IMG/VR virus record: IMGVR_UViG_3300004151_000006 | Span: 222,689 to 286,688 of that record | Strand: one strand, 5' to 3' | DNA: 64,000 bases | Shown: positions 7,209 through 32,771 of the stretch, one piece after another | How the letters are laid out: the number at the start of each line of letters is the position of its first letter | How positions within the stretch are numbered: the stretch's first letter is position 1 | Notes under the pieces: generated by a model | Told to the model about the DNA's origin: nothing | Database searches by the model: none | What the model saw: only the letters and a program-made list of their open reading frames with translations | Program-made: the position numbers and the translations under genes

Positions 7209-10200
7209 ATGTTGACTATGCAGGACTTTTTCTTTGAATGTGATGATATTGAAACAAATATCATCTCCAATGAAATGTTTAACTATCCAAGATTTAAACT
7301 TAATTATCATAACTGGAAGTATTCCTTCTTGACTAATAATTTTTTTGACATTGGTACAATGCAATTGCCATGGGATGCTACGTATCATACTGCAGATAAT
7401 TGGTTTGGTGGCGTACAACAGGACTATCCAAATATAGTCAATGATCCTTTTATCTCTAACGAAATGTATTATAAATGGATCTATCATCAAACTATATTTC
7501 AATTAAATGGTCCTATTCAATATGATACTAAATACAACTATTTGACTAGTGGGTTGTCTACTATCTTAAATGCATTTCGATCACAATATAAAGCACAGTT
7601 TCGATATCTTCAAAAATTAGAAGACACTCCAAGAAAGAAAGAATCTCTCACTATCATTAATTACAATCCTTTATTTAGATGTTACACATTTGGTGCATTG
7701 CAATATTTTAAGAAAGTAAATTTGATATTATCTACTATGTTTAATACAGTAGCTCACATGATTGATATGTATCCAGATAAACATCAATATATCTTGATCC
7801 CATGGAATAATGAAATCTATACTCAAGATCAATTTACACGTACAAAGAAAAAGATCGATATCTCTTCATTGAGAAATCCCAATAGTTTTCATTTTATTTT
7901 TATGGTCTATTTGATGAATTTCATTGATCCTAATACTGATCTTGGACTCTTTAATCAATATCCAGAAAAGTACTGGAAAGAAACTAATTTAGTATTTCGA
8001 AATGGTAATAAAGCCACTATCTTTAATTTAGAAGATCTCAAGACTCTTAATGATAAAAATAGAGCCTATCTCAAGGTAGTATCGCATCTCAATATCTTAT
8101 CTACCATAGGGAGCAGTACTATAGTACTGGATACCTCTGAAGTAGATGGTATCTCTGGACCAACAGATCGTATCCCAGTGATCACTGAGACTAAATGTAC
8201 TATCTCATTACCTGATATCACTACAGTACCTTTAGATAAGACTAATCCTGAAGTCACTGATAAATCAGAGAGTGTCTCTAAAGATCCAGTACCTATCGTA
8301 GATACTACACAGAGTATCATGCCTAGCAGTATCATTGGTACAACCAAATCAGTGATCCAAAAGACTTTTATCCCTATGGTAAAATCCACAGTATCTATTA
8401 TGCCTAAAGTGATCTCTAAATCAGATACACCAAATCAAATATTAGAAGACACTAAACCTGTGATGAGAAATCTCATTCCACAATTAGCTTCTAATATCAC
8501 CCAGATAGAATCAGAGACTGATCCCAATGTAATCAAACAGCGTAGTAAAGAATATTTAGAAGACATTGATGCACAAGCTGTAACATATATTGATAATAGA
8601 GAAGATCTCACCCCAAAACAAAAAGAAAGACTCAAGACTGTAGCAAAGAAATATAAACAAGTCACTATTGGTGAAGAGACTCTTCAAGATATCATCCTTA
8701 AAAACAATGATGTACTCATTGATGAAGATCCACCACAGTCTGTGATAGATACTTTACCTGATAAGACTATGGCTAAATCAAAAGCATTTCATTTTGATAA
8801 AGCTTATATCCATAAAACTATGAAAAAAGACTTAGCCAGCATTGCTGTAAACTTTAATAAACTTGGTATGTTTTTGACAGATATTAAGACTTCACAGACT
8901 ATTAATGAATTGACACAATCTGAAGAATACACTTTTAAGTTTGAAGATGTCCAAGGTAAATCACATACTGTCAAATTCAGCGTGCCTATCATTGATAGTA
9001 ATGGATATTGTTATATCAACGGTGTCAAAAAGTATTTGAAGAAACAAATGATCAATATCCCAATTTGTAAGATAGGTGAGAATAAGGTTTCTATGGTCTC
9101 CAATCAGAATAAAGTATTGATCTTGCGTAATGAAACTAAAGCTCATAGTTTTGATACACAGATAGATAAAATAGTAGAACTTGGAAAATCAGTACTTAAT
9201 ATAATCTATGGTACACTGGATCTCAATCTTTCTTTAGCTTATGAATATGTCTCCATTGCACAAAAATATAATACCATTACTATTAAATCACAAGATGGTA
9301 AATCACATACTTTATGTTTTGATTATTATAATAGATTTAAAGATATTGCTGATGTAGCACTACATTCTAAATTAGATGCATTGGAGAAACAATATGGTAC
9401 ACTCTTTGGTAAAGATGGTCATACTGGATATTATTTTATTGATACTAATAACTTAGTCAGTTTGATTACATTGGATAGAAAAGATATCACACCTTCAGAT
9501 GTGGTATCTATTGTAGATATCTTTAAGACTACATATCCTAAAGAGTTAGCTAGTAAGATAGGTTTCATCACAGAATGGATAGATATTAACTTAGTCTCTA
9601 AACCTTTACCTGTTGGATTTATCTTAGCATACCGATATGGTCTAGTCAACATGATGGATCACCTTGGGGTGAAATATAAGCTCTTAGCTAAACGTGGTAA
9701 TAGTGTGTTAGAAGAGAGTGAATTCTCAGGTGAGAATGTTATTTCTGCTACTGAGTCTTTTGATACTTTGACTATGGATAAAGTGATCAATATTGATACT
9801 CGTAGGAAATGGAAGATCGATGATGTCAAACATCTTGAACTTTTAGAAAAGTACAATATATCTAAAACTGAATGTATCATCAGTGGTAGTGCTGCTATGA
9901 TAGCACATCGATATCCGAACTGTATCAACAATGATCTTGATATTGTGGTGACTGATAGAGTATATGCTAAACTTAAAAAGGATACTACAAATTTTTCAGT
10001 ACATAAAGCACGTGATGGTATTGGTACTGATATAAAATTGGTCAGCAAAGATGAGAAACTTGAGATCACTAAATATTTCCATGCTTTATCTGAAGAATAT
10101 ACTTTTGATGTGGTGAAAAAAGAAAGTGTGAATGTCATTGATGAATATATGTTCACTGATTTGGATTTCTTATTTAAAATGTATACCAAACTCAATAGAC

Positions 10201-11174
10201 CTAAAGATCAAGATAAGATCAAATGGTTGACGGAACATCAAGGTAAGACAGTAGCTGCCAATGAATCCCTGATATCACATGTGACTGATAAAATCATCTA
10301 TATTGAAGATGAAGCACATCATTTGGTGAATGCTAATGAAGCACTCACTGTAGATAAGTACACTTACACCCCTGGGGATATAGTCATCAAATTCAAAGAT
10401 TGTAATTTAGTCTTCAATAGGTATCCCATGTATCAATCTTTGATCATGTGTGGGCTCGATCATTTCAATACCCAAGCATATACCTTTGATGAATTTAATA
10501 TGAAAGATGTATATTACTCACTCATGGAAGATAGGGGTATCAAATCTAACTACCTTAAAGCTGTTAATAGTTTCTTTGATCTCTTTATGGACCCTATCAC
10601 CAAAGATGTACTTCAGCAGATGGGTGAACCAACTAATGTACAAGATCTCCTGATCAGAGCCAGTGTATTACTTACTACCAAAGATCATAAAGAGGCTTCA
10701 TCTATAGCCAACCACCGTATCCGTAGCTATGAACAATTCAATGCTATCATCTATAATGAAATGGCTAGAGCCTATGCAGCCTATCAAGTGGGTAGAGGTA
10801 AAGGTAATACTTTCAGTGTGAATCCCAATGCTGTATTCCAACGTATCATCCAGAACCCATCATTCACTATCGTAGAAGATATCAATCCTATCCAGGAATT
10901 AAAAGAAAGAGCTGGATTTACTTTTGCTGGTGTGGGTGGTCGTACATCTGAATCTTTTGTAGTGGATGATAGACGGTATCCTGAAGATGGTATTGGTATC
11001 ATCTCTGAATCTACAGTCGATAATGCTAAGGTCTCCATGAATGCTTATCTCACTGTTGATCCAACTATAGCTAATACTCGTGGTATCATTGATATTGAAG
11101 CTTTAAATAAATTAAGTTCTAGTAATGTACTCAGTGTCACTGCACTTAATGCACCATGTGCAATGCATGATGAT
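7209..11174 (+). CDS. Phage multisubunit RNA polymerase beta subunit (phiKZ gp178-like, virion RNAP), exon 1; contains nucleotidyltransferase insert
   Basis: DINPIQELKE..TFAGVGGR, GIISESTVDNAKV and PCAMHDD (beta HDDANR region); joins exon 2 to give about 1704 aa. Confidence 0.88.
9810..10229 (+). other. In-frame Pol-beta-superfamily nucleotidyltransferase domain inside RNAP beta
   Basis: ISGSAAM, DLDIVV, LEI and RPKD..KIKWL; homologous to 31179-31586. Confidence 0.85.
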
Positions 11175-11554
11175 GGAGATGTTGAATACACAGAAGATTC
11201 AGCATTATCTCTCTGTCCCACCAAATAGTGATATTTGGATGGTATCTCCCCTAATTGCTGGGATACCCTTAGAGCCATTCTACCTAAGCGGAGTGTGAAA
11301 ACACACACGTGTCGAAAGACAGGTTGGAAAAGTGAATGGATTGGGTAATCAGCAGCGAAGTCCCTAAAGACACTATGTCCATGGGATGTGTTCAACGACT
11401 GACCGCTTATCACGGTGTACACACTGAGTGGTGTGGAAATGGGGAGCACCCCAAGTGGGTGAAGGTATAGTCTCATCTGCATTGAAAGATGCAGCAGTAC
11501 AGTATATTTATACTGTACGGGATTGTAGGTAACGCTACAGTCCGAAGACACATG
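11175..11554 (+). ncRNA. Group I self-splicing intron (IA2-like), no ORF
   Basis: P AATTGCTGGGA (11253), Q AATCAGCAG (11347), R GTTCAACGACTGA (11390), S AAGGTATAGTC (11462); P3 CTCCCC/GGGGAG; exon ends in U and intron in G; splicing restores HDD-SKRISF in frame. Confidence 0.92.
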
Positions 11555-12703
11555 AGCAAACGCATAAGTTTTATATCTACCCAGATGAGTCATGTGGTGG
11601 CTACTAAAGACCTTGATCTTTGTAGAGTCCGTACTGGATATGAAAATATGATAGGACAACAATGTAGTAGTACATATGTTGGTATAGCAAAACAAGATGG
11701 TGTAATCACACAAGTAGATAGAGCTAATAATATCCTTAGAGTGGATTATAAAGATGGAACAGCTGATGTGTATAGTTTTGGTGAACAATACACCAATATC
11801 TCTGGTATGTATATTACACAACATCTCATTTGTGTCGTAGACCAGGGTGATAAAGTAAAGAAAGGTGATATACTCTGTTTCAATGATCAATATTTTAAAA
11901 TGGATAAATATACTAAACAATTAAATGCTGGACATGGTGTGTTAGCTAAAGTGGTACTTATGGAGACCGATAATACACTTGAAGACAGTAATGCTATCAC
12001 TAAACAGTTTGGTAAAAGACTTACCATCACACCCACACATACTCGAGATATTGTATTGACTAAAAATAGTGTGATACATCAATATCTTACAATAGGTACA
12101 CATGTAAAGAATACTGATACTATATTGGTGTTTGAAGATGAAGATCTTGGCGATATGGGATCACTCACTGGTGGGGATATCTCAACTTTAGAGATGTTAA
12201 AGACACTTAATAAAAATATGCCTAAAGCTAAACATAGTGGTGAAATAGTCAAGATAGAGGCTTTTTATGCCTGTCCTATATCTGAGATGGGTGAATCTGT
12301 AGCTAAACTTGTCACTGAATGTAATAAATCTAAATTAACTAAATATAAGTTCTCTCGTGGTACCAATATGGAATATGATTATATTCCGCCCACAGTACTT
12401 CCTGAAAGGACTAAATATAAAGGTAATGAATTTGATAAGGATACGGTAGTCATTCAGTTTTATATCAAAGAGGATATAGCACATGGTGTTGGTGATAAAG
12501 CTGTACTTGGAAATCAATTAAAAAGTACCTCTAATGAAGTATTAGAAGAACCTATTCTTTCTGAATCTGGTATAGAGATAGATGTCGTATTTGGTACTGC
12601 TAGTGTAGCAAATCGTGTTGTACTTGGATGCTTTTTATCTGGTAGTGCATCTAGAGTATTGGAAGAATTACAATATCAAGCTGTAGATATGTATTTTAAT
12701 TAA
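11555..12703 (+). CDS. RNA polymerase beta subunit, exon 2
   Basis: SKRISFISTQMSH, VKKGDIL, EDS, GDKAVLGNQLKS and IDVVF..SVANR motifs. Confidence 0.88.
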   Translation, partial: SKRISFISTQMSHVVATKDLDLCRVRTGYENMIGQQCSSTYVGIAKQDGVITQVDRANNILRVDYKDGTADVYSFGEQYTNISGMYITQHLICVVDQGDKVKKGDILCFNDQYFKMDKYTKQLNAGHGVLAKVVLMETDNTLEDSNAITKQFGKRLTITPTHTRDIVLTKNSVIHQYLTIGTHVKNTDTILVFEDEDLGDMGSLTGGDISTLEMLKTLNKNMPKAKHSGEIVKIEAFYACPISEMGESVAKLVTECNKSKLTKYKFSRGTNMEYDYIPPTVLPERTKYKGNEFDKDTVVIQFYIKEDIAHGVGDKAVLGNQLKSTSNEVLEEPILSESGIEIDVVFGTASVANRVVLGCFLSGSASRVLEELQYQAVDMYFN

Positions 12704-12713
12704 CTACTGATAG

Positions 12714-12749
12714 AGATGGATGTAGGGGCATATGCCCCTACATCCATCT
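12714..12749. terminator. Perfect 36-bp palindrome
   Basis: AGATGGATGTAGGGGCAT|ATGCCCCTACATCCATCT. Confidence 0.6.
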
Positions 12750-12755
12750 GCATTG

Positions 12756-12777
12756 AATATATATATTATTCACATGA
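12756..12777 (+). promoter_or_regulatory. Putative early promoter
   Basis: TATATATTA-TTCACA-TGA. Confidence 0.65.
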
Positions 12778-12835
12778 TACAATGTATTTATTTTTAAGGA
12801 TCACTATCAATGATTTGAAATGGAGGTAAATCCAT

Positions 12836-13672
12836 ATGGGTAATGATTCAACAAATCATACAAAATTGATTCATAGTATATTAAATAATTTAGAAGATAC
12901 TGCCTATGGTCAGAAAAGAGAAATGATGCATGAGTTATATAACACCGATATCTATTGCCCATCAATTACTCCAATGAAAATACCATCATGTAAATCAGGA
13001 GTATTATCTATAATGAAAACATTTCCACTAGATATGAATCTTGGTAAAACTCTATATTTCAATGAATTGGAGATACGTAAATATGAAGCTTTTGATAGTG
13101 ATGTAAAGATACCAGAATCTATCACTGTAGGAAGCATTGCTTTATATTTATCTGAGAGTAAACAATGTAGTGTTATGGAACTTTACAGTACAATGGATCC
13201 TTATCAGAAATATAAATTAGCTATAGTGTTTAAAGATAATATGTTCATTGAACCATTGAAGATCTTTTTATTTCAAAAGTTATACAGTTATATGGGAGGG
13301 AGTCCATTATATCAGGATATACACAGTGTGTTTGGTAATGACAGTATCAATCTACGTGCGGATCCACGACATATATATGTAAAATGTAATAAAGATACAA
13401 TAAAACCACATGAGGTAACTAAATATATTTATTATGATAAATCAAATACATCATCAGAAACATTGAGTGGACGTTGGGATGATACATCCAGAGTAGAGTA
13501 TTTAAATTATAAACATGAATTGTATAAAGATGATACCTGCATACTACTTGAGATCTTACATATTGAAGATATAACTATATTGCATAAACATATGCATACA
13601 TCTAGACAATACACAAAGTTAGATAGCTGGTTAGGTGTAAATCTCAATATACGGAGTATCTATGGGATATAG
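12836..13672 (+). CDS. Hypothetical protein (paralog of next gene)
   Basis: GGAGGT SD; shares EIRKYE..IP and C-terminal WxGVxLxxxxIxGI with 13662-14675. Confidence 0.8.
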   Translation: MGNDSTNHTKLIHSILNNLEDTAYGQKREMMHELYNTDIYCPSITPMKIPSCKSGVLSIMKTFPLDMNLGKTLYFNELEIRKYEAFDSDVKIPESITVGSIALYLSESKQCSVMELYSTMDPYQKYKLAIVFKDNMFIEPLKIFLFQKLYSYMGGSPLYQDIHSVFGNDSINLRADPRHIYVKCNKDTIKPHEVTKYIYYDKSNTSSETLSGRWDDTSRVEYLNYKHELYKDDTCILLEILHIEDITILHKHMHTSRQYTKLDSWLGVNLNIRSIYGI

Positions 13673-14675
13673 TGGATGTGAGTTATTAAAACCCATATCA
13701 AGTACAAATCAAGATTTGATATATCGACCATATTTAATAAAAATACAAGATATAAACAAAGAAATAAAAGAGATAGAAGAAATATTAGAATGTAATAGAA
13801 GAATATATTACGATCGGTGTAATGATGGTTTTGATAATAAAAGTCTTGTAGAAAATATTGATTTATTAGTTAAAAAATTAGAAAAGAAAAGAATTGAATG
13901 GTGTGAATATGACAAGAAAATCAAGGAGGTAAAATTAATGAGTGTGACAAATCACATGAAAGATGAGATCGCATATCCATTTGGTATTAATATCAACAAT
14001 GCTATTCTCATAGATCCCATTGAAATCAGGAAATATGAATGCTTAGATACATGGTTGGCTATCCCAGATCAATTTGAAATCAAATGTATTGGTATGTATA
14101 GTACTAAAAATGGAAATAGTCGTGTTGTTGAATTGTATAATGGTACAGATATACTTAACAGTGAATACAAGATGAGTATTTTGACTACAGATGCAAAAGC
14201 TAATGCTATTAGAGAAATTATATTCTTTGAAAGAGCAGAGATCGGTAATGTGGTTACAGATATTGAACAATATCGTACATTACGAAAGATGTGTGGTGAT
14301 GGATATATCACTTTAAATTGGGAAAATGATGAAGTGCCAATGGAACGTATTTATACTCGTATATTGGATAATCAAGATCTGAGTAAATCATCAGAAAAGA
14401 CCATCTCTAATCATAAACTATTTTACAATAAAGTCATTGATCCAAAGAATAATAAAGAATATGCACATGAATGGAGTTTCCAATGTCCGATTGATAGTGT
14501 ACCATATATCACAATGTTGTATGAAGATAAAGATACTCAAGTTGGTGAATTGGTAGAATTTGATTGTTTCAATTATAGAGAAGGATATCGCGGTAGCGAT
14601 TTTAATGCAAGGCATGTAATTATTTGGGTGGGGGTAAAACTTAGTTTGACAAATATTAAAGGTATCTATGTTTAA
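13662..14675 (+). CDS. Hypothetical protein, coiled-coil N-terminus plus paralogous domain
   Basis: 337 aa; second in-frame start with AGGAGGT SD at 13938. Confidence 0.75.
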   Translation: MGYSGCELLKPISSTNQDLIYRPYLIKIQDINKEIKEIEEILECNRRIYYDRCNDGFDNKSLVENIDLLVKKLEKKRIEWCEYDKKIKEVKLMSVTNHMKDEIAYPFGININNAILIDPIEIRKYECLDTWLAIPDQFEIKCIGMYSTKNGNSRVVELYNGTDILNSEYKMSILTTDAKANAIREIIFFERAEIGNVVTDIEQYRTLRKMCGDGYITLNWENDEVPMERIYTRILDNQDLSKSSEKTISNHKLFYNKVIDPKNNKEYAHEWSFQCPIDSVPYITMLYEDKDTQVGELVEFDCFNYREGYRGSDFNARHVIIWVGVKLSLTNIKGIYV

Positions 14676-14681
14676 GGAGGG

Positions 14682-15787: not shown

Positions 15788-15807
15788 ATCCTAAATACGG
15801 AGGTAGC

Positions 15808-24343: not shown

Positions 24344-24621
24344 TGGATACTCAACAAGTAAAAGAGTATTGGGAGAATCTCCCCAATTGTGAAAAAATTA
24401 GAGTAATATTACGATTAGAAGAATTTTCAGAATTTGAAGGTATTTCAATTTCATATACATGTACATCATACCCACTACCAGTTGGGCATGATGGAATTAT
24501 AATGTATTCAAAGGTATATTCTGATATAAAAACAGATCCTTTTGATAAGTTTTTAGAAGTATTAACCTGGTGGTTATCAACTAAGGAGGGACAAGTATAT
24601 GAACGAAGCACAAAAATCTAA
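24343..24621 (+). CDS. Hypothetical protein
   Basis: TAATG coupling; resembles the C-terminal part of the preceding protein (KExWxNL...EFxxI). Confidence 0.7.
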   Translation: MDTQQVKEYWENLPNCEKIRVILRLEEFSEFEGISISYTCTSYPLPVGHDGIIMYSKVYSDIKTDPFDKFLEVLTWWLSTKEGQVYERSTKI

Positions 24622-25231: not shown

Positions 25232-25794
25232 TGCCTATGCTCATAGATAAAGATATCAATCAATTGAAATCAGAAGCATTGGCATATGACCAAGCTATCA
25301 AATGTTTAGAATCTTATATGGCTAAAGCAAATTTGAATATCTCAATATTGACATGTATGGATAATGGTTTTTATATTGGTAGAGAATTTGGATTTTTAAG
25401 ATATGATAAAGATCAACCAATTATAATTGGTAAAATCATAGATATTGGAATTGATAACACCATGATAATTGAATTTAATATATTAGAAACAACCAATACA
25501 TTCAAATGTCAGCTGATTATAAATACGACTACTTTGTTGCCACAGTATATTCATATTGAAGGTGGGACATTTGGAAAACTTTTATTGATTGAATTGATTT
25601 ACTTTTTAGATATAGATATCCCCAATAAATCAATATTGTTTAAGGATGATCCATATCAAAAGAATCTTAAATTGTATAAAGCATTGGATATCACTGAAAG
25701 GACTAAGCTATATGGGTATGGTGATGACTTCATATTGAATCAAACTCTATCTAAGGATAGTACTACTGAGCTATTGATACAACTATCTGAATAG
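25231..25794 (+). CDS. Hypothetical protein
   Basis: TAATG coupling. Confidence 0.75.
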   Translation: MPMLIDKDINQLKSEALAYDQAIKCLESYMAKANLNISILTCMDNGFYIGREFGFLRYDKDQPIIIGKIIDIGIDNTMIIEFNILETTNTFKCQLIINTTTLLPQYIHIEGGTFGKLLLIELIYFLDIDIPNKSILFKDDPYQKNLKLYKALDITERTKLYGYGDDFILNQTLSKDSTTELLIQLSE

Positions 25795-25804
25795 GAGGAA
25801 TGAC

Positions 25805-26449
25805 ATGACACAATTTAATATCCCTATCTTAAAAGTTCATCTCAATATGTTATCAAATAGAATTGTGGGCATGCTTGAGGAATCAAAACAAATAGAAAAA
25901 GCTATCAGCAGTGATCTTGATTCTATAAAGACAGTATTATCTGAATTTGCTATATTTGTATCTAACACTATATTCATAAGTGATTTACCAGATTTAAAAG
26001 ACACCACCTTTAAAACTGTTGATATGGATGTTGTTGTGGAAAACAATGATATTGTTATTAAATTAAAAGTATTGAGACATACAGTTTTAGAATCTTCCAT
26101 TACATTTAAACTAGATGAATTGACCCACTTTTTGAAACACACTACAGTGGTAGAAGAGAATTGTCATATTGATATCCCAGAAGTTTGGAAAGGTCAATAT
26201 ACGCTACCAACCATTGAAGAATTTAGTAATTATCAAATATGTATATTAAATAAACAAGTTGAAAGGTTGATTACGACATACCATAAAGATAATGTGAAGG
26301 TGTTAGATAGTGATGATGCAACATACATTACTGTATCAGTTAAACCAACAGTGAAAGTCACTAAGATGTTGAAGATCTATATCAGTGGTGCACATGAACA
26401 TGGTTTTATTGTTACACAAAAACCTATTGGAGATATTGATGTCAAATAA
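25805..26449 (+). CDS. Hypothetical protein
   Basis: AGGAGG SD. Confidence 0.75.
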   Translation: MTQFNIPILKVHLNMLSNRIVGMLEESKQIEKAISSDLDSIKTVLSEFAIFVSNTIFISDLPDLKDTTFKTVDMDVVVENNDIVIKLKVLRHTVLESSITFKLDELTHFLKHTTVVEENCHIDIPEVWKGQYTLPTIEEFSNYQICILNKQVERLITTYHKDNVKVLDSDDATYITVSVKPTVKVTKMLKIYISGAHEHGFIVTQKPIGDIDVK

Positions 26450-26918
26450 GAATCTCATTAAAAATGAGGATGGTACATATTCTGTAGTATTGTGGGATTC
26501 GATTAAATCAAATATCAAATATGATCTCGATTCTATCGAGCAATGTATCATAGTACCAACTATTGGATTTAAATCGAGATGTGATGGTCGTATAGCATTT
26601 GGTGAACTGGACCCAATATATACAGAAAATATGGCTGAATACATGGAGATAAAAACAACGAATATTTCACATATGTTTACTGGAGTTGAATGTATCTGGC
26701 CAACAGAAGATAAACGTAGATTAGTGATAGCAGCTAGAGTGTTACCAATGGGTCCACATAAACGTCATTTACAAGACCATATTGATAATAATTGGGAATT
26801 GCAATTTAAGCCTAGATGGTTGGTAAATACAAATATCACACATACTGATGTAATATCTATAATTACTTTTGATTGGTACTACAATGCACCATATACTGTA
26901 TGTAAGGAGACACTATGA
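26439..26918 (+). CDS. Prohead-protease-like (T4 gp21/phiKZ gp175 fold) protein, probably inactive
   Basis: AFGELDP, ISHMF, VLPMGP, FKPR and IITFDW track the family motifs; the expected catalytic Ser is not visible. Confidence 0.6.
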   Translation: MSNKNLIKNEDGTYSVVLWDSIKSNIKYDLDSIEQCIIVPTIGFKSRCDGRIAFGELDPIYTENMAEYMEIKTTNISHMFTGVECIWPTEDKRRLVIAARVLPMGPHKRHLQDHIDNNWELQFKPRWLVNTNITHTDVISIITFDWYYNAPYTVCKETL

Positions 26919-27289
26919 CTATATCATCCGTGACTAAGATTTGTAATGCTTATGAAGCTGGATTTGGTACTGGTATGGAGCTTAAATTTACACATATAAA
27001 TCCATATTTTCTAGATACTGAAGAATCTAAAGCTTGGAGTATTGGACTTAAAGAAGGTGAGAAACGTAGTATGGAGATTGAAAAAAATAAGATCACACTC
27101 TCAGATAGATTTGAAGCTATGGATATAGAAAAACAAATGCTATTTAATGCAAAGTTTACTTCACAAATATTGACAAATGCTACTATTAAAGAAGCATTGA
27201 AGCTATGTGATTTATTGATAGAAAATGTGCCAGATGAACAAGTGATACTCTATAGATCAGCTTTGGGTATTGTGACCAAAATAGACTAA
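26915..27289 (+). CDS. Hypothetical protein
   Basis: AYEAG...NPY...AW..G motif; AAGGAG SD. Confidence 0.7.
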   Translation: MTISSVTKICNAYEAGFGTGMELKFTHINPYFLDTEESKAWSIGLKEGEKRSMEIEKNKITLSDRFEAMDIEKQMLFNAKFTSQILTNATIKEALKLCDLLIENVPDEQVILYRSALGIVTKID

Positions 27290-27350
27290 AATATATATCA
27301 TTTCCTCGAAGACTCAGAAATGATGATGTCTCGAGGACTCGACATGATCA
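27288..27350 (+). repeat. Promoter-overlapping double inverted-repeat element, copy 2
   Basis: TATATATCA-TTTCCT-CGA; ATCATTTC/GAAATGAT; ATGTC-TCGAGGACTC-GACAT. Confidence 0.75.
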
Positions 27351-27367
27351 CCTATTCGGAGGGACAC

Positions 27368-27763
27368 ATGAAAAAAGAACACACAGTCTATTATCAAGTG
27401 TTAGTACTCTTATTGTGGGTAGGTGTTGCATATCTTGGTAAATGGGGATTTATTTCTTATGAACCTGGTATGCGCAATCAGACAGTGTTAAAGTTCACTA
27501 TCACAGATTTCATTATATATACTGCAATATTCTTTATCAACATAAAGATGTATCATTATTTTATTTCAGCAGCAGTATATTGGAATAAACATTTTAATAT
27601 GTTGCTATTTAGTATCATTATACTGGTACCATTTATTTATTTAGGTAAACATACCTATATGCAACTTGCATATGAGGGAATACTCAACATTATTAATGTG
27701 TACATGATAGATACTGTTTTGTGTACTATCTTTCATAAACGATATGAAAAGAGTCTTGCATAG
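27368..27763 (+). CDS. Multi-pass membrane protein
   Basis: About 4 hydrophobic segments; GGAGG SD. Confidence 0.7.
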   Translation: MKKEHTVYYQVLVLLLWVGVAYLGKWGFISYEPGMRNQTVLKFTITDFIIYTAIFFINIKMYHYFISAAVYWNKHFNMLLFSIIILVPFIYLGKHTYMQLAYEGILNIINVYMIDTVLCTIFHKRYEKSLA

Positions 27764-27876
27764 ACGGTGTAAATCATACTGTTTTACATAGTTTTATATC
27801 ACATATGGATCTGATATAGATCCACTACTGACAAAGGTTCTCATTCAACATCCTTTTACCTCAGGAGTACAGACTC

Positions 27877-28134
27877 ATGGCTATCAAAGTCATTGTCGAA
27901 GTCGAAGATGGGGATGTCACTGGCGTCCAGTCCAATGAAGCTATGGACGTCATGGTCTTCAATCGGGATAAGGCTGATCCGACTAGCTCTGACTATGTCG
28001 AGGATGCTCTTGGTGCACCTGCCCAGATGGCAGTGTTTCATGTGGAACCAGTCACAGATGTCGCTGATCTTTATGACACCTATGCGACCAGTCCCGATGC
28101 ACTGATTGATTGTGCATGTGAAAAAGAAGAATAG
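27877..28134 (+). CDS. Small acidic protein
   Basis: AGGAG SD; 85 aa. Confidence 0.75.
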   Translation: MAIKVIVEVEDGDVTGVQSNEAMDVMVFNRDKADPTSSDYVEDALGAPAQMAVFHVEPVTDVADLYDTYATSPDALIDCACEKEE

Positions 28135-28148
28135 TCAATAGTGTAGGA

Positions 28149-28180
28149 GTGGAGTAGGAGATCATGATCTCCTACTCCAC
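28149..28180. terminator. Perfect 32-bp palindrome
   Basis: GTGGAGTAGGAGATCA|TGATCTCCTACTCCAC. Confidence 0.55.
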
Positions 28181-28232
28181 CACTCTATCTTATGCACCTT
28201 TTACTTTTTCTCTACTAGGAGGGATACCATCC

Positions 28233-28880
28233 ATGGATGCTCAGACGACTGCTCCGACTGAAGGTCAGGAGACTCCTAAGACTCCTGATTTCGAACAAGC
28301 ATATGGTGTGATCCAACATCTGGAAACACTCATTGAGATGCTCAAACGTACTCCTGATCTTAAGATCCAGATCAATGATGCATTCAATTTCTTTTATCTT
28401 TGTATGCCCTTTTTCAAAAATGAAGTATTTTATGAAAATGTATTTGAAGAATTTTATCCTAAGGATAATCCCTCGCATGATATCGTGAAGCCCATGTTTG
28501 ATATGATGATGATCAGATACAAAGAGATGTTTGGATTTGAAAAAGTGAATATGTTATCTCCTGAAGACTTTCAAAAACTCTTGTATCAAGGTGCTGTACT
28601 TAAAGAAGAATATGAGATGTTTACTGGACAAAAGCCCATGGATACTCCTCCTCAGATGGATCCTAATATGGAAGCACAATTACGTGAACGTAATATTAAT
28701 TTGAATGATCTGAAGATCGATCCCAGTAAGATGGAGACTATCCATCTGGATCCTTCTCAGATGGAGACGATCCATATTGATCCTAAAGATGTGGGTAATG
28801 TGGAAGATATTATGGGTGATCTCAGTACCGGGTCTACTGTAGTGGATGAAGCTATCAAAGATACATTAAATCAGAAATAA
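28233..28880 (+). CDS. Hypothetical protein with 10-aa repeats
   Basis: AGGAGG SD; DPSKMETIHL/DPSQMETIHI repeats. Confidence 0.75.
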   Translation: MDAQTTAPTEGQETPKTPDFEQAYGVIQHLETLIEMLKRTPDLKIQINDAFNFFYLCMPFFKNEVFYENVFEEFYPKDNPSHDIVKPMFDMMMIRYKEMFGFEKVNMLSPEDFQKLLYQGAVLKEEYEMFTGQKPMDTPPQMDPNMEAQLRERNINLNDLKIDPSKMETIHLDPSQMETIHIDPKDVGNVEDIMGDLSTGSTVVDEAIKDTLNQK

Positions 28881-28903
28881 TAATAGTATAGGAGGAAGAG
28901 ATC

Positions 28904-29032
28904 ATGCGCAAATATACCTTTGGTGGTGGTGGATCTGTCCAGACAATGGGTGGAGCTAGTGGATGTGTTGGTGGAGCTGGTGCTAAAGATCCTGGGGTCA
29001 AACACCCTGTGGAAAAGAGCACTGGTAAATAA
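28904..29032 (+). CDS. 42-aa Gly-rich peptide (not in ORF track)
   Basis: AGGAGG SD; MRKYTFGGGGSVQTMGGASGCVGGAGAKDPGVKHPVEKSTGK; followed by a palindrome. Confidence 0.65.
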   Translation: MRKYTFGGGGSVQTMGGASGCVGGAGAKDPGVKHPVEKSTGK

Positions 29033-29055
29033 ACGTCAAGTGACTGTAGTCATCT

Positions 29056-29091
29056 ACACCTACACCGGGGGATATCCCCCGGTGTAGGTGT
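29056..29091. terminator. Perfect 36-bp palindrome
   Basis: ACACCTACACCGGGGGAT|ATCCCCCGGTGTAGGTGT. Confidence 0.55.
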
Positions 29092-29179
29092 GATATTAAA
29101 TATATATTTTTTCATACGAAATATAAACATATATTATTATCATGTATTGGATAGATCATCACTACAGGAGCATCTCACG

Positions 29180-30610
29180 ATGTTGACTATATCTAAAGAT
29201 CCTAGGGATACCACAGATCCTTCAGAAATAGATCCATTCTACGATAACACCATATCAAATGAACAATATTTCCTTCAAGCTATAATAAATGGAAGATTTA
29301 TATTGGAAGGTGATGATCATATCATCTATGATACTAAACGAAATATACGTACTATTTTTGATTTTAATAAAGTATTACCTGAAGGTGTCAAAAAGTCAAA
29401 TTACCTCAAATATGAAATCAATCTTTATTCACCCATTAAGAAACGTAGAAAGATCTATCTTCATAAGTTTGTATGGATGTACTATACGAGATCATTAGTC
29501 CCAGAGGGACATGCCATCATACACAAGGATGATAATATCTACAATTGTCAATATTCCAATCTCAAGATGCAATACCCGAGGATAGAAGATCCATCTTTCT
29601 TTGATACTACGATATCTGATGTTGACTGGTACTATAGTCAAGTACTCCAAGATCGATTTGAGATGAGAGACGATGGCAATCAAATCTATGATAAAAGACG
29701 AGATAAAGTGACTACTCCTGGAAAACGAATGGGTGAAGAACATGATCCTGATAATACTAAAAAGAAATTTGAATATAACATCGTGGCTACCAATAAAGTT
29801 CTCTATAATAGAAAGATTCAATATCATAGATTGGCTTGGATGATCTATCATAAGCAAGCTATACCAGAAAGTTATGAGATTCACCATATTGATCATAATA
29901 GACAAAATAACAGTAAAGATAACTTACAACTACTTTCTAAGAGTGAACATACGCAGTTGCACCAACAAGATCTTGAATATGTGGATGCCAGAACTGTATT
30001 AAGAAAATACCTACTTTCATTAAAGAGAAAATATTATCTTACTGATCATCAACTATGTTTTACATGTAAGCGTTATCTACCAATAAAAGAATTTGATATA
30101 ATTATTGAAGGGTCATATTGTTGCAATGAATGTATGTCTTTAAAGAAAGCTGGTTTGGAGAATAATATTTATAAGTTTTCAGAAGGTATCTTAGATGATA
30201 CAACGGTGTTAAATATTCGATTTGGATTTCACATAATGAATAAAAAGTTTAGATCCTTACTTTATAAATATCAAGATACTGGCATTACTAAAGAGCAGCT
30301 TAAAGATCTATTGCTTGGAAATACATATACTCATTTACCTAAATTGTTTGGTATCAGAGAATTCCCATATAGGTCAGAACTAAGTATTGATAGATTAGAA
30401 TATTGTCATATACAAAACGCTATGACCTATGGTGGATTTACTTTAGAAGAAATATCAAAGATGTTTGGTAGACCTGAGATGATGGTAGAATATGTATTAT
30501 TAACTGGACAGTATAAAGAAAAATTAGAACTTGAAATGGAGATACAAAGTGTAATCAATAAAATTCGGTATGGTGTATCATCTGAATGTAATATTAATTA
30601 TTTTGCATAG
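29180..30610 (+). CDS. Free-standing HNH homing endonuclease with duplicated HNH module
   Basis: YLHKFVW...IIHKDDNIYNCQYSNL and YHRLAW...IHHIDHNRQNNSKDNL; start behind AGGAG. Confidence 0.85.
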   Translation: MLTISKDPRDTTDPSEIDPFYDNTISNEQYFLQAIINGRFILEGDDHIIYDTKRNIRTIFDFNKVLPEGVKKSNYLKYEINLYSPIKKRRKIYLHKFVWMYYTRSLVPEGHAIIHKDDNIYNCQYSNLKMQYPRIEDPSFFDTTISDVDWYYSQVLQDRFEMRDDGNQIYDKRRDKVTTPGKRMGEEHDPDNTKKKFEYNIVATNKVLYNRKIQYHRLAWMIYHKQAIPESYEIHHIDHNRQNNSKDNLQLLSKSEHTQLHQQDLEYVDARTVLRKYLLSLKRKYYLTDHQLCFTCKRYLPIKEFDIIIEGSYCCNECMSLKKAGLENNIYKFSEGILDDTTVLNIRFGFHIMNKKFRSLLYKYQDTGITKEQLKDLLLGNTYTHLPKLFGIREFPYRSELSIDRLEYCHIQNAMTYGGFTLEEISKMFGRPEMMVEYVLLTGQYKEKLELEMEIQSVINKIRYGVSSECNINYFA

Positions 30611-30622
30611 TTAAATACATAG

Positions 30623-30656
30623 TGGCATCAGACCCACATATGTGGGTCTGATGCCA
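30623..30656. terminator. Perfect 34-bp palindrome between convergent genes
   Basis: TGGCATCAGACCCACAT|ATGTGGGTCTGATGCCA. Confidence 0.65.
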
Positions 30657-30665
30657 TCATAACTA

Positions 30666-32771
30666 TTAGATATAATTTTTTTCGGCAGTATTGGGTTCTC
30701 TACTAAGCATGTGAAATGTATAACCACCAATTTTACAATTCTTTAACCCCGTATTCAAATGTCCAGCACTATTAACTACACTGAATGGTTGTTGATAAAA
30801 GTTTTCCATTTCATGGTTAGCCTCTTCTGATAATGTCACAATAGCTGATAAAACATCACCATCTACGTCAGCATCATACGTAGCGAAAGTACTACTATGC
30901 ACGCACATACTGTCTTGAGATTGACCATTATAAATTGGATATCTTGGTAATATTACTTTGATATCACTGATAGGATGAATGAGTTCTACTGTTCTATTTG
31001 GTTCAGTAGTTTGGATATTGATACGTGTAGGTAAAATACCAAATACATTAAGAATGGGATATCTCGTAGCAGTAGTGTGGTGTGGTGGATCACTGAGATT
31101 GATTTTGACATAAGCAACAATATAAAACATTTCTACATATGTGAGTGGTCTTAGATGCTTTGGATCATATACTCTAGTCTTAAGCCATCTGAGTTTAGGT
31201 TTATCTTTAGGTCTAAGTTCTGGAGATAATGTATATCCAGTCTGTAAAGTAAAGAGACTATCAAACAAATACCCATCAATTTCATCAGCTATCTCTTTGA
31301 CACGTTTGTGTTCTAATTGGGCTACTGGGGAGTAATACATGACTTCCATATGACCAGTGGGATCAATGAGTACTGGAGTATCCTTAGTAGTAGGCTTAGG
31401 CTTGAATCCAAATTCTTTAGCCAGCCTATCAAAAGTCTCTTTAGATATTGTGACATCTAAGTCTTCATTATTACCATCTGGATATCCATGGGCCATGAGT
31501 GCTGCACTCCCAGAGATCACAGCTTCATCTTTAGGAATGTTGTATTGATCCAACAATTCAAGATATTTGATATCTTGGATACCCCAACTAGGTTTATTTT
31601 CTAATGCTTCAGCAAAGTCATTTTTATTTCTTAAAAGATAGATTTGATCACCCATGTCATATACAAGATAAAGATATTGGAATTTACCAGCTTCATCTTT
31701 GATAGCCACTGGGAGATGTCGAATATTCTCATTCCTAAAGAGATTGATGAGTTTGGTGATACCATCACTGGTAGTAAAGAGTACCCTATCTTCATCTTTG
31801 ATAGTGAAGTATTTGAGTTCTAAAGTCTTAGAGTCTATGAGACTATAATTGATAGAAGTGTTATCAAAGATCTGATTGAAAAACATATCTTTGATACCAT
31901 GGATCATGAGTGGTGTAGATCCTTTAGCCACTTGGAATAGTGGTAACATCGTTTCATCTGCTTTGAAATATTTAGGATCCAAAGGAGATTTGACTCTGGA
32001 TAAAGGAGGTGAAGTGATGACATTTCTATTACCTAAAGCTACATTTCTAGCAGCAAACTTTCCTTGAGCAAATCCTTTTTTACCAGTCATGAGATTTTCT
32101 ATATATTCATATATTTGTACAGTGCGCATCTGGATATTAAATCTTAGACTATCAAAGATAGCATTGTCTTCTTCCATCTCTGGCATGGCTTGAGCAAGAC
32201 TCAAGAGTCCAAGATAAAACTTATTGATATCTTCACTTTCTATTTTACCATCTTCATTTCGAACATCTCTGACTCCAGCAGCTATCACGATATATTTATC
32301 TATCATCAAGATATTTCTATATTTATCTAAGATAGAGAGTTTATCTTTACGTTTTAAAGATTCTGTTTCTTTAAATTCTATCTTTGGAAACCATTTTAAA
32401 AAGAAACTATATCCAGTACCTGCAGTAGGATCCATCATCTCAGCTCTCACTAATTCTCTGATATCCTTATCATATTTAGCATAGGTCTTACCAGAGAGGA
32501 TCTCACCATAGAGTCCTTTGAGTGAGACTATAGTCTTATATACCAATGGTTGAAAGATCTGTGTACGGAGATCAATATATCCACGTTGAAAGAGTCTAGT
32601 AGATGATCCCACTTGACCAAAGATGACTTCAGAGAAAAGACCTTCTGGATGGAAGGTCATGGTAGAGGGTTCATAGATTTGATGTGAAGTGATGGGGAGA
32701 CATTGATTTTTTTGGATATAAGACTTTGGATCCAATAATTTGATGTTGATGGGTGGGCGTAACTTTTGCAT
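30666..32771 (-). CDS. Phage RNA polymerase beta-prime catalytic subunit (phiKZ gp180-like, virion RNAP) with nucleotidyltransferase insert
   Basis: HPEGLFSEVIFG, GKKGFAQGKFAARNV..GNRNVI, TRYP and DADVDGD; start behind AAGGAG; adjacent to tape-measure gene. Confidence 0.88.
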   Translation of the reverse strand: MQKLRPPINIKLLDPKSYIQKNQCLPITSHQIYEPSTMTFHPEGLFSEVIFGQVGSSTRLFQRGYIDLRTQIFQPLVYKTIVSLKGLYGEILSGKTYAKYDKDIRELVRAEMMDPTAGTGYSFFLKWFPKIEFKETESLKRKDKLSILDKYRNILMIDKYIVIAAGVRDVRNEDGKIESEDINKFYLGLLSLAQAMPEMEEDNAIFDSLRFNIQMRTVQIYEYIENLMTGKKGFAQGKFAARNVALGNRNVITSPPLSRVKSPLDPKYFKADETMLPLFQVAKGSTPLMIHGIKDMFFNQIFDNTSINYSLIDSKTLELKYFTIKDEDRVLFTTSDGITKLINLFRNENIRHLPVAIKDEAGKFQYLYLVYDMGDQIYLLRNKNDFAEALENKPSWGIQDIKYLELLDQYNIPKDEAVISGSAALMAHGYPDGNNEDLDVTISKETFDRLAKEFGFKPKPTTKDTPVLIDPTGHMEVMYYSPVAQLEHKRVKEIADEIDGYLFDSLFTLQTGYTLSPELRPKDKPKLRWLKTRVYDPKHLRPLTYVEMFYIVAYVKINLSDPPHHTTATRYPILNVFGILPTRINIQTTEPNRTVELIHPISDIKVILPRYPIYNGQSQDSMCVHSSTFATYDADVDGDVLSAIVTLSEEANHEMENFYQQPFSVVNSAGHLNTGLKNCKIGGYTFHMLSREPNTAEKNYI
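31179..31586 (-). other. In-frame nucleotidyltransferase domain inside RNAP beta-prime
   Basis: ISGSAAL, DLDVTI, MEV and RPKD..KLRWL; homologous to 9810-10229. Confidence 0.85.

What the first reader, a model, noticed from the sequence alone, without database searches (positions are those of the whole stretch)
9810..31586. Both RNA polymerase subunits carry a homologous inserted nucleotidyltransferase domain
Seen: the beta gene (9810-10229) and the beta-prime gene (31586-31179), about 21 kb apart on opposite strands, each contain a ~140-aa segment, and the two align by eye end to end. WKIDDVKHLELLEKYNISKTECIISGSAAMIAHRYPNCINNDLDIVV matches WGIQDIKYLELLDQYNIPKDEAVISGSAALMAHGYPDGNNEDLDVTI; LEI matches MEV, IDEYMF matches IDGYLF, and RPKDQDKIKWL matches RPKDKPKLRWL. 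Established: hGS, DxD and a third acidic residue form the catalytic signature of Pol-beta-superfamily nucleotidyltransferases; I know of no such domain in cellular or phiKZ RNAP subunits. Inference: two diverged copies, both keeping the catalytic residues, in two subunits of one enzyme argue for selection. The packaged RNAP may modify nascent RNA, NMPylate host or defence proteins on injection, or carry the enzyme into the capsid; the two domains might also dimerise.
Basis: partly seen in the sequence, partly recalled or inferred. Interest (0 to 1): 0.93.

Follow-up and report, generated by a model that had tools for sequence, protein, structure and literature searches.

The report
Enzyme domain inserted in phage RNA polymerase
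An uncultured giant phage has built a small, apparently active nucleotide-transferring enzyme into two subunits of the RNA polymerase that it packs into its particle and injects, a design not seen in any cultured relative and probably a way to deliver that enzyme at the first moment of infection.

Summary
The phiKZ gp178-like beta gene (aa 862-1010) and the gp180-like beta-prime gene (aa 402-547) each carry a ~145-aa segment. The two segments align at 34% identity, E=3e-20. An AlphaFold model (pLDDT 92.7) matches only Pol-beta-superfamily nucleotidyltransferases, best ANT(2'')-Ia.

All 314 cultured jumbo phages with these subunits lack the insert. In metagenomes it marks a large clade: 92 of 93 beta-prime homologs in one well-supported clade carry it at the same site. 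The G-S and DxD motifs are intact in 62 of them; a 22-member subclade keeps the domain but has lost them.

The beta copy is a lineage-specific duplicate of the beta-prime copy. Relatives also carry the domain in tandem, at the C-termini of beta-prime and beta, on a third virion-polymerase subunit and inside a giant virion lysin. Hundreds of free-standing 125-165-aa phage proteins belong to the same family, which no curated library covers.

Best reading: an active minimal nucleotidyltransferase that rides into the cell on injected virion proteins. The acceptor is unknown; a polynucleotide 3' end is my first guess. The closest concept is the injected "polyvalent proteins" of Iyer et al. 2017. 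I rate it a new variant of a known kind.

The parts
7209..11174 (+). Exon 1 of the virion RNA polymerase beta gene (phiKZ gp178-like)
   Evidence: phrog_3148 2e-159, matched up to profile position 1050. A PDB profile search hits bacterial RNAP beta. The exon end is inferred from the intron boundary.
9792..10238 (+). NTase domain inserted in beta (aa 862-1010). Motif residues: G893-S894, D909, D911, E952, Y992, R997, K999, D1000, K1003.
   Evidence: 34% identity, E=3e-20 to the beta-prime insert. Domain HMM 4e-48. RSF1 beta has about 12 aa here. It lies between segments collinear with E. coli beta 126-154 and 507 onward.
11175..11554 (+). Group I intron interrupting the beta gene (Rfam match 11174-11494; splice sites inferred)
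   Evidence: RF00028, 64.5 bits, E=4.5e-14. U at 11174 and G at 11554 would join ..HDD|SKRISF.., which fits the family consensus DDxKR.
11555..12703 (+). Exon 2 of the beta gene
   Evidence: ORF 11489-12703 matches phrog_3148 positions 1051-1420 and RSF1 beta 1085-1460.
30666..32807 (-). Virion RNA polymerase beta-prime N-terminal subunit gene (phiKZ gp180-like)
   Evidence: phrog_2986 6e-129. tblastn hit PHIKZ180. hhalign to E. coli beta-prime 204-517, including the DFDGD motif. The PDB profile search hits AR9 and bacterial beta-prime.
31167..31604 (-). NTase domain inserted in beta-prime (aa 402-547). Motif residues: G433-S434, D449, D451, E488, Y525, R532, K534, D535, K538.
   Evidence: AF2 model pLDDT 92.7, pTM 0.87. 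Foldseek PDB top hits are ANT(2'')-Ia, JHP933, Cid1, TUT7, CCA-adding enzymes and PAP. In the full-length model the domain keeps pLDDT around 90-95 with short linkers. The insertion point maps between E. coli beta-prime ~415 and 416.

Best explanation
The two segments are copies of one small (~140 aa) minimal nucleotidyltransferase (NTase) of the Pol-beta superfamily. The family otherwise exists as free-standing phage proteins of 125-165 aa. Here the domain has been inserted in frame into surface loops of the virion-packaged RNA polymerase (vRNAP).

Shown:
- The fold.
- The insertion points.
- The beta-prime copy is old and inherited vertically in a large uncultured jumbo-phage clade.
- The beta copy is a later duplicate of it.
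- The catalytic residues are under purifying selection in most lineages.

Inferred:
- The vRNAP is packed in the capsid and injected with the DNA, so the fusion puts a ready-made enzyme into the cell, or into the early infection compartment, before any phage gene is expressed.
- The domain binds an NTP through G-S, DxD and Mg2+ and transfers the NMP to a hydroxyl group.
- My first choice for the acceptor is the 3'-OH end of a polynucleotide: early transcripts, damaged tRNA or RNA, or the ends of the injected genome. That would be template-independent tailing or end repair.

Roughly 0.55 for 'active enzyme delivered by riding on virion proteins', and 0.35-0.4 for the polynucleotide 3'-end acceptor within that.
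For: Identity and activity:
- The model has pLDDT 92.7 and every PDB match with probability 0.9 or higher is an NTase.
- Across 80 copies: G 74, S/T 76, D 77, D 79, E/D 66.
- dN of the insert is 0.16 against 0.25 for the core.

Delivery logic:
- The host proteins are orthologs of phiKZ gp180 and gp178, the vRNAP that must be injected (PMC10612078 abstract).
- The domain occurs at five or more different positions on virion proteins: the beta-prime dock loop, in tandem there (P0001), the beta-prime C-terminus (P0069/78/79/85, P0249, P0259), the beta internal site, the beta C-terminus (P0336), the N-terminus of a third vRNAP subunit annotated as a virion structural protein (P0261), and inside a 3163-aa virion lysin with an SLT domain (P0338).
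- All RNAP hits in the listed results belong to vRNAP PHROGs.
- One free-standing homolog directly follows a gp5-like spike gene.
- Sister beta subunits carry other enzyme domains, GNAT and transglutaminase-like.
- Injected multi-enzyme 'polyvalent proteins', including N4-type vRNAP fusions and minimal Pol-beta NTases, are an established pattern (PMC5512222).

3'-end acceptor:
- A close free-standing-type relative is fused to a LigD 3'-phosphoesterase domain (P0250).
- The RSF1 homolog ORF104 lies directly downstream of a DNA ligase gene.
- The beta-prime site maps to the dock region, which I recall lies beside the RNA exit channel of cellular RNAP.
- Other small NTases (RlaP) add 1-2 nt to damaged RNA 3' ends (PMC12776372).
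Against: - No biochemical data exist and the acceptor is a guess.
- The fused domains are acidic (median pI 5.3) and have no recognisable nucleic-acid-binding module.
- The best structural match is a small-molecule-modifying enzyme, ANT(2'')-Ia.
- 31 of 97 inserts at the beta-prime site, including a whole 22-member subclade, have lost G-S or DxD yet keep the domain. Catalysis is therefore dispensable in some lineages.
- Contexts of free-standing homologs are mostly nondescript nucleotide-metabolism regions.
- The ligase adjacency is a single lineage.
- The 'vRNAP only' pattern rests on the 150 best of 448 hits. nvRNAP subunits were not surveyed directly.
- If this clade encloses the injected DNA and vRNAP in an early vesicle, as chimalliviruses do, a tethered enzyme could not reach cytoplasmic targets.
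- Virion packaging of this particular polymerase is inferred from orthology and from synteny with the giant lysin gene. It has not been observed.
Confidence: 0.45

Rival explanations
1. Injected effector acting on a protein or small molecule. The vRNAP-borne NTase NMPylates a host or defence protein (as MNT antitoxins do to HEPN toxins), or nucleotidylylates a small molecule (as ANT(2'') does to aminoglycosides). This would disarm something that acts at the very start of infection.
For: - The top structural match is ANT(2'')-Ia.
- The domains are acidic.
- Position-independent fusion to several virion proteins is what a pure cargo would show.
- Companions on similar carriers are protein-modifying enzymes: GNAT and transglutaminase-like on beta homologs, and NTase+SET+GNAT in P0273.
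- Iyer et al. 2017 predict protein NMPylation for minimal NTases of polyvalent proteins.
Against: - No match to any PADLOC defence or antitoxin NTase model, nor to Pfam MNT, AbiEii or ANT families at their thresholds.
- No HEPN partner.
- The domain remains covalently inside a large polymerase, and no protease-site enrichment suggests release.
- The function-specific associations that were found (LigD phosphoesterase fusion, ligase neighbour) point to polynucleotide ends.
Confidence: 0.27
2. Co-transcriptional RNA enzyme. The position in the beta-prime dock loop is the point. The NTase works on the transcript made by the same polymerase, for example by tailing released early mRNAs, much as poxvirus virions carry a poly(A) polymerase with their RNAP.
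For: - The commonest and oldest site maps to the beta-prime dock region, beside the RNA exit channel by my recollection.
- Structural matches include Cid1, TUT7, PAP and an African swine fever virus poly(A) polymerase catalytic subunit.
Against: - The 5' end of the RNA, not the 3'-OH, emerges from the exit channel.
- The same domain also works at the beta lobe-side site, at the C-termini, on another subunit and in a lysin, so proximity to the exit channel is not required.
- It was not seen on non-virion RNAP paralogs in the listed hits, although those also make mRNA.
Confidence: 0.13
3. Structural lineage-specific insertion. The domain was captured once and now serves as an architectural or packaging module, like the sequence insertions of bacterial RNAP. 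Catalysis is vestigial.
For: - A 22-member subclade and several scattered lineages keep a full-length domain without G-S or DxD.
- In the full-length model the domain is joined by short, confidently modelled linkers.
- Both sites lie in regions that I recall carry lineage-specific insertions in cellular RNAP.
Against: - 62 of 92 inserts in the main clade, all 10 beta copies and the free-standing family keep the full catalytic set at 20-40% overall identity.
- The domain was recruited repeatedly and independently to other positions and proteins. A purely structural spacer would not explain that.
Confidence: 0.1
4. Selfish in-frame mobile element (intein-like or homing-associated) with no benefit to the phage.
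For: - The same genes do attract selfish elements: a group I intron in beta and an HNH endonuclease gene beside beta-prime.
- Presence and absence are patchy outside the main clade.
Against: - No intein splice motifs at the borders and no nuclease fold.
- Inheritance within the 93-member clade is vertical with a single site.
- Domain divergence tracks host-protein divergence.
Confidence: 0.03

Closest known systems
Polyvalent proteins of phages and conjugative elements (Iyer, Burroughs, Anand, de Souza, Aravind 2017, PMC5512222), including N4-type virion RNAP fusions
   Same: A virion-delivered protein combines unrelated activities in one polypeptide. The repertoire named there includes minimal Pol-beta NTases, GNATs and peptidases. 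The logic is to have enzymes present at the earliest phase of infection.
   Different: Here the carrier is the multisubunit, cellular-type vRNAP of jumbo phages. The domain is an internal insertion in conserved-core loops of beta-prime and beta rather than a bead on a string. The NTase family is different: the one in that paper is firmicute, ArdC-linked and NTox45-related. No release protease is evident.
ANT(2'')-Ia aminoglycoside nucleotidylyltransferase (PDB 4wqk, 5kqj) and JHP933 (4o8s)
   Same: Best structural matches (probability 0.99-1.0, TM 0.51-0.54). Similar size, and G-S / DxD / third carboxylate in the same order.
   Different: Only 13-17% identity. The Pfam PF10706 model is not matched by the inserts and only sub-threshold by one free-standing relative. 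The substrate-binding C-terminal part differs. Nothing links the domain to antibiotics.
Free-standing small NTases of cultured phiKZ-like phages (phrog_12854; e.g. RSF1 ORF104, RP12, PhiEaH1, EL and 201phi2-1 proteins in BFVD)
   Same: Same family or fold. phrog_12854 E=2e-8 and 2e-5. RSF1 protein TM 0.66/0.76 and HMM E=3e-15. 116 free-standing copies keep the DxD.
   Different: Separate genes, all annotated as hypothetical. Their C-terminal motif is K..RxKDxxD rather than Y..RxKDxxK. None has a known function.
Lineage-specific sequence insertions of bacterial RNAP (e.g. E. coli beta SI1, beta-prime SI3)
   Same: In-frame domains in surface loops between conserved regions. By eye the beta insert follows the phage counterpart of E. 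coli beta 200-224, where I recall SI1 begins.
   Different: From my own knowledge, known bacterial insertions are non-enzymatic beta-rich modules. This one is an enzyme fold with conserved catalytic residues.
RlaP (PF10127) and other RNA 3'-end NTases; poxvirus virion poly(A) polymerase
   Same: Pol-beta NTases that add nucleotides to RNA 3' ends. RlaP is common in jumbo phages (PMC7824862; PMC12776372). Poxviruses package an NTase together with their RNAP (my own knowledge).
   Different: No PF10127 match. Much smaller, with no RNA-binding domain. Activity on RNA is untested.

Membership tests
Pol-beta superfamily nucleotidyltransferase (fold level) | hG[GS] turn followed by [DE]h[DE]h on the next strand | tested here: met
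   Beta I-S-G893-S894 ... D909-L-D911. Beta-prime I-S-G433-S434 ... D449-L-D451. Conserved in 74-79 of 80 copies.
Pol-beta superfamily nucleotidyltransferase (fold level) | Third carboxylate (h[DE]h) on a later beta-strand | tested here: met
   E952 and E488 lie in a predicted strand (aa 487-490). E or D in 66 of 80 copies. The column alignment is less certain than for DxD.
Pol-beta superfamily nucleotidyltransferase (fold level) | Alpha/beta NTase core fold | tested here: met
   AF2 pLDDT 92.7. The 30 best PDB matches are all NTases (ANT(2''), JHP933, Cid1, TUT7, CCA-adding, PAP, PolX), probability up to 1.0, TM 0.5.
Pol-beta superfamily nucleotidyltransferase (fold level) | NMP-transfer activity | not testable with these tools
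   Needs biochemistry.
ANT(2'')/Aminoglyc_resit (PF10706) | Match to the family profile above its curated cut-off | tested here: not met
   No hit for either insert at E<=1. One free-standing relative scores 14.8 bits against a cut-off of 21.
DUF7277 (PF23942) / DUF6036 (PF19502) | Match above the gathering score | tested here: not met
   DUF7277: 20.8 and 14.9 bits against a cut-off of 27. DUF6036: at most 21.7 bits against 23.6 for free-standing relatives. Probably related families, not membership.
phrog_12854 (phage protein family, function unknown) | Significant match over most of the 137-position profile | tested here: met
   Beta insert E=1.9e-5, profile positions 12-126. Beta-prime insert E=2.1e-8 but only positions 10-73.
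RlaP (PF10127) | Profile match; association with an RNA ligase | tested here: not met
   No PF10127 hit. The only ligase association is a DNA ligase next to RSF1 ORF104.
MNT antitoxin of HEPN-MNT / AbiEii-MenT toxins | Profile match and a partner gene (HEPN toxin, or AbiEi/MenA antitoxin) | tested here: not met
   No Pfam, PADLOC or NCBIfam match. No such partner beside the genes. The resemblance of the C-terminal K/Y..RxKDxxD/K motif to DUF1814 is from memory only.
Polyvalent (injected multi-domain) proteins | Unrelated activities in one polypeptide | tested here: met
   RNAP subunit plus NTase. Relatives add GNAT and transglutaminase-like domains.
Polyvalent (injected multi-domain) proteins | Packaged in the virion and injected with the DNA | not testable with these tools
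   Inferred from orthology to phiKZ gp180/gp178, from 'virion structural protein' annotations of orthologs, and from synteny with the giant lysin gene.
Intein | N-terminal C/S, C-terminal HN followed by C/S/T, Hint fold | tested here: not met
   The borders read ..NKPS|WGIQ.. and ..RVYDPKHLRP... The fold is an NTase.

The most novel reading that the evidence does not exclude
The multisubunit virion RNA polymerase of a large uncultured jumbo-phage clade is a general chassis for injected enzymes. Its subunits and neighbouring ejection proteins carry interchangeable catalytic modules (this NTase in one to two copies, GNATs, a transglutaminase-like domain). The NTase gives the injected transcription machine a second catalytic activity, either polynucleotide 3'-end tailing or repair, or NMPylation of a host factor, that is needed before any phage gene is expressed.
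Probability: 0.35. Interest if true: 0.85.

Novelty: new variant of a known kind. Interest (0 to 1): 0.72.

Why it matters
As far as I know, large subunits of cellular-type RNA polymerases carry only non-enzymatic insertions. A conserved catalytic domain built into the beta-prime dock loop and the beta lobe region would be a first.

It points to an unknown activity that jumbo phages need at the instant of genome entry. That stage, with the vRNAP and the early infection vesicle, is under active study but has few known players.

It also defines a family of small phage nucleotidyltransferases that no curated library covers: at least 448 clusters at 50% identity. Free-standing members occur in cultured phiKZ-like phages such as RSF1, so the biochemistry is directly testable in laboratory systems.

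Finally, it extends the 'polyvalent injected protein' idea from single-subunit N4-type polymerases to multisubunit ones.

Tried and rejected
- Nucleotide and protein searches of 50,697 GenBank phage records with the beta region and the beta insert: no match to the insert.
- A word-index homology search with the insert alone found nothing. Only the full HMMER profile search did.
- The search for related loci in IMG/VR returned only the source contig itself.
- phmmer of beta-prime against PDB sequences found nothing. Profiles were needed.
- hhalign could not align the N-terminal half of the phage beta to E. coli beta, apart from a weak match to the 126-154 motif (probability 2%). Placing the beta insert at an SI1-like position therefore rests on collinearity and on a motif read by eye.
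- Release of the domain by the phiKZ-type prohead protease: the [SAG]xE motif is not enriched at the borders (28/68 upstream, 3/68 downstream, expectation about 26%). Rejected.
- Intein or mobile-element reading rejected.
- RlaP, MNT, AbiEii and ANT membership rejected or unsupported.
- Gene neighbourhoods of four free-standing homologs gave no consistent theme. The ligase adjacency of RSF1 ORF104 is confined to one phage group.
- dN/dS proper was not usable because dS is saturated (pS about 0.7). Only dN was compared.
- No third copy exists in the 64-kb window, and no non-virion RNAP subunit lies in it.
- The third fold search was not used. The full-length beta-prime model (pTM 0.59) gives no reliable orientation of the domain on the core.

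Full report
**1. What is in the sequence**

ORF 7209-11228(+) encodes 1339 aa and ORF 30666-32807(-) encodes 713 aa. BLASTP of the two proteins gives a single significant alignment: beta aa 862-1007 against beta-prime aa 402-542, 34% identity over 151 columns, E=3e-20. All other local alignments have E>3. The similarity is therefore real and confined to one ~145-aa module.

PHROG profiles identify the host proteins as jumbo-phage RNAP beta (phrog_3148, 2e-159) and beta-prime N-terminal subunit (phrog_2986, 6e-129). In both proteins the polymerase match falls into two stretches, on either side of the module. Profile searches of the PDB hit bacterial beta and beta-prime and the AR9 beta-prime.

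The window comes from IMG/VR contig IMGVR_UViG_3300004151_000006, 286,688 bp. It is less than 35% identical at protein level to any cultured phage.

**2. Which polymerase**

The phiKZ match of the beta-prime protein is PHIKZ180. Orthologs of the beta protein are annotated 'virion-associated RNA polymerase'. The beta-prime gene is followed by a 291-aa gene and a 3094-aa protein with a VgrG3-like lysozyme domain. The same order is seen in relatives and in Ralstonia phage RSF1, where ORF040 (beta), ORF041 (beta-prime) and ORF042 (giant SLT protein) are adjacent.

These are therefore the gp178/gp180-type subunits of the virion RNA polymerase (vRNAP). According to PMC10612078 (abstract) that enzyme transcribes early genes and must be injected with the DNA. 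Packaging of this particular enzyme is inferred, not shown.

**3. The segments are insertions**

RSF1 beta aligns to window beta on both sides of the module with about 12 residues in its place. The same holds for beta-prime. A 37-sequence alignment shows the beta-prime insert exactly between ..FRN..DF.. and ..D..K[IL]RP[LM]T.EM.Y...

hhalign to E. coli beta-prime places the insertion point between residues ~415 and 416. That is the end of the dock region, just before HPVLLNRAPTLHR. The GKxG, R(N/S)VIT and DFDGD motifs align correctly (probability 77%). Iyer et al. 2021 (PMC7824862) note that vRNAPs have their own alpha+beta insert in the beta-prime double-psi barrel. No paper I found mentions an NTase there.

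For beta, residue 1214 aligns with E. coli 507 (probability 96.5%) and residues 591-619 align weakly with E. coli 126-154. By eye, SKPLPVGFILAYRYGL resembles E. coli RRKLPATIILRALNY (residues 200-214), and the insert begins about 45 residues later. This puts it in the lobe-side region, near where I recall E. coli SI1 begins. The placement is an inference.

The two sites would then lie on different faces of the enzyme. That argues against the two copies pairing within one polymerase, but no 3-D complex could be built here.

**4. Fold**

The beta-prime insert was modelled with a 46-row alignment and gave pLDDT 92.7 and pTM 0.87. Foldseek against the PDB returns only Pol-beta-superfamily nucleotidyltransferases at the top:
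- ANT(2'')-Ia (4wqk, 5kqj; probability 1.0, TM 0.53);
- JHP933;
- then Cid1, TUT7, CCA-adding enzymes, poly(A) polymerases and PolX.

Against predicted viral structures the best matches are small uncharacterised proteins of cultured phiKZ-like phages: RSF1 (125 aa, TM 0.66/0.76), RP12, PhiEaH1, EL, 201phi2-1, Phabio and Noxifer. In the model of the whole beta-prime subunit the domain keeps pLDDT around 90-95 and is joined by short linkers.

Curated libraries do not cover the family:
- Pfam gives only sub-threshold DUF7277, DUF6036 and ANT(2'') hits.
- PADLOC and NCBIfam give nothing.
- phrog_12854, a 137-position profile of unknown function, is matched.

**5. Distribution**

Of the 120 best beta-prime homologs, 76 carry the domain by HMM. 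Of the 120 best beta homologs, 10 do.

A site census of 124 beta-prime proteins gives 75 recognisable inserts, 22 strongly diverged inserts of about 127 aa at the same site, and 27 without an insert. Four of those 27 carry the domain at the C-terminus instead.

On a tree of the beta-prime core with the insert columns removed, one clade of 93 sequences (support 99) has the insert in 92. Of these, 62 have intact G-[ST] and DxD and 30 are degenerate. The sister group of 31 mostly lacks the insert, with a few exceptions. A 22-member subclade is uniformly degenerate, which suggests a single loss of catalysis with retention of the domain.

Across 80 well-aligned copies the conserved positions are G 74, S/T 76, G 75, D 77, D 79, E/D 66, Y 78, R 64, K 65, D 71 and K 69. 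All 10 beta copies keep DxD.

Between the window and its closest relative L002, the insert is 79% identical with dN 0.16. The core is 70% identical with dN 0.25. dS is saturated.

**6. History of the two copies**

In a tree of 227 domain copies, the window's beta copy (with P0122 and P0123) and the beta-prime copies of the same sub-lineage (window, both P0001 copies, P0003, P0004) form one 8-leaf group. The beta insert of this lineage is therefore a duplicate of its own beta-prime insert, not a separate capture.

Other lineages reached two copies by other routes: a tandem pair in P0001, and an internal plus a C-terminal copy in P0249 and P0259. Other beta copies group with other beta-prime or free-standing copies. 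The short alignment resolves few deep branches.

**7. The wider family**

A profile of eight copies was searched against 1.84 billion representative proteins. It finds 448 proteins at E<=1e-3, and most of the listed ones are free-standing proteins of 125-165 aa. Larger carriers are:
- more vRNAP beta-prime and beta subunits, including a C-terminal copy on a full-length beta (P0336);
- a fusion to a third vRNAP subunit whose orthologs are annotated 'virion structural protein' (P0261);
- a 3163-aa virion protein with an N-terminal lytic transglycosylase (P0338).

Other fusions join the domain to a LigD 3'-phosphoesterase (P0250), SET+GNAT (P0273), radical SAM (P0294) and rubrerythrin (P0356).

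Free-standing genes lie in large-phage genomes. One is next to NAD-salvage genes, one directly follows a gp5-like spike gene, and two are in nucleotide-metabolism regions. In RSF1 the homolog is ORF104 (HMM E=3e-15), directly downstream of a DNA ligase gene. That arrangement is shared only with its close relatives.

Some beta homologs carry other enzymes: GNAT domains in P0194 and P0223, and a transglutaminase-like domain in P0236.

**8. Interpretation**

The domain is almost certainly a nucleotidyltransferase that is, or recently was, active in most lineages.

The strongest pattern concerns its carriers, not its position on the polymerase. Three different vRNAP subunits at five or more positions, plus a giant lysin, are all virion proteins. 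This fits the 'polyvalent protein' strategy described by Iyer et al. 2017 (PMC5512222). In that strategy phages and plasmids inject multi-enzyme polypeptides with their DNA. The examples include N4-type vRNAP fusions, and minimal Pol-beta NTases and GNATs are in the repertoire.

I therefore favour a delivered, early-acting enzyme. For the acceptor, the only function-specific clues are the LigD phosphoesterase fusion and the ligase neighbour. Both point to polynucleotide 3' ends, and tethering to an RNA-making enzyme fits that. The acidic charge of the domain and the ANT(2'') match keep a protein or small-molecule acceptor nearly as likely. The dead subclade shows that the domain has also acquired, or always had, a structural value.

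No excision by the prohead protease is indicated. Nothing supports an intein or other selfish element.

**9. Novelty**

Full-text searches found no description of an NTase, or of any enzyme domain, inserted in jumbo-phage vRNAP subunits. None of the 314 cultured jumbo phages that match these subunits has it. The delivery concept has a clear precedent, so I rate this a new variant of a known kind, with high interest because it is testable.

**10. Limits**

- There is no biochemistry, no 3-D placement and no virion proteomics.
- The beta and beta-prime homolog sets are not paired by genome.
- Only the best 120-150 hits of each search were inspected.
- Non-virion polymerase subunits were not surveyed directly.

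Noticed in passing
window 11174-11554 (+): A group I intron (Rfam RF00028, 64.5 bits) splits the vRNAP beta gene right after the invariant HDD motif. The likely splice is U11174 | ... G11554, which joins HDD to SKRISF. The intron has no ORF. Introns with homing endonucleases in the gp178 gene of phiKZ-like phages are known to mediate phage-phage competition (PMC11620839).
   Followed up: partly
window 29177-30610 (+): A free-standing ORF with two HNH_3 endonuclease domains (Pfam E=6.5e-20) lies directly beside the beta-prime gene. The closest relative, L002, has no such gene at this place, so it is probably a homing-type endonuclease.
   Followed up: partly
window 33764-43048 (+): A 3094-aa protein with a VgrG3-like C-terminal lysozyme domain (aa 2400-2559) and long low-complexity stretches. 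It is syntenic with the giant virion lysin next to gp180 in phiKZ-type phages (RSF1 ORF042). This copy carries no NTase domain.
   Followed up: partly
L008:6001-15492 (protein P0338): A 3163-aa virion protein with an N-terminal lytic transglycosylase carries the same NTase domain at aa 1560-1686 (profile E=1.4e-7), in a phage structural gene block.
   Followed up: partly
L002:10001-12607 (P0001); proteins P0249, P0259: The closest relative has two NTase domains in tandem at the beta-prime site (aa 404-562 and 559-704). P0249 and P0259 have one internal and one C-terminal copy. Two copies per polymerase have thus arisen by at least three routes.
   Followed up: partly
proteins P0060, P0088, P0097-P0107, P0111, P0112, P0119, P0103, P0080 and neighbours: A 22-member subclade of beta-prime subunits keeps a ~127-aa insert at the same site, but G-S and DxD are replaced (e.g. 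..ITEQTVFNVLSNATNTESITS..). The domain is retained although catalytically dead.
   Followed up: partly
proteins P0194, P0223, P0236 (vRNAP beta homologs): Other enzyme domains sit on vRNAP beta subunits: GNAT at aa 338-427 of P0194, two GNATs near the C-terminus of P0223, and a transglutaminase-like domain in P0236.
   Followed up: partly
L016:1278-1655 (-) = RSF1 ORF104; L011:6001-6432: The free-standing homolog in cultured Ralstonia phage RSF1 lies directly downstream of the DNA ligase gene (ORF105). In a metagenomic phage, a homolog starts within the last codons of a gp5-like tail-spike gene.
   Followed up: partly
window ~8100-8500 (+), beta aa ~300-430: The N-terminal part of beta holds a long stretch rich in S, T, P, V and I that looks disordered and is not conserved in relatives.
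   Followed up: no
window 7209-12703 and 30666-32807: The beta and beta-prime genes are 21 kb apart on opposite strands here, whereas they are adjacent in RSF1 (ORF040/041).
   Followed up: no
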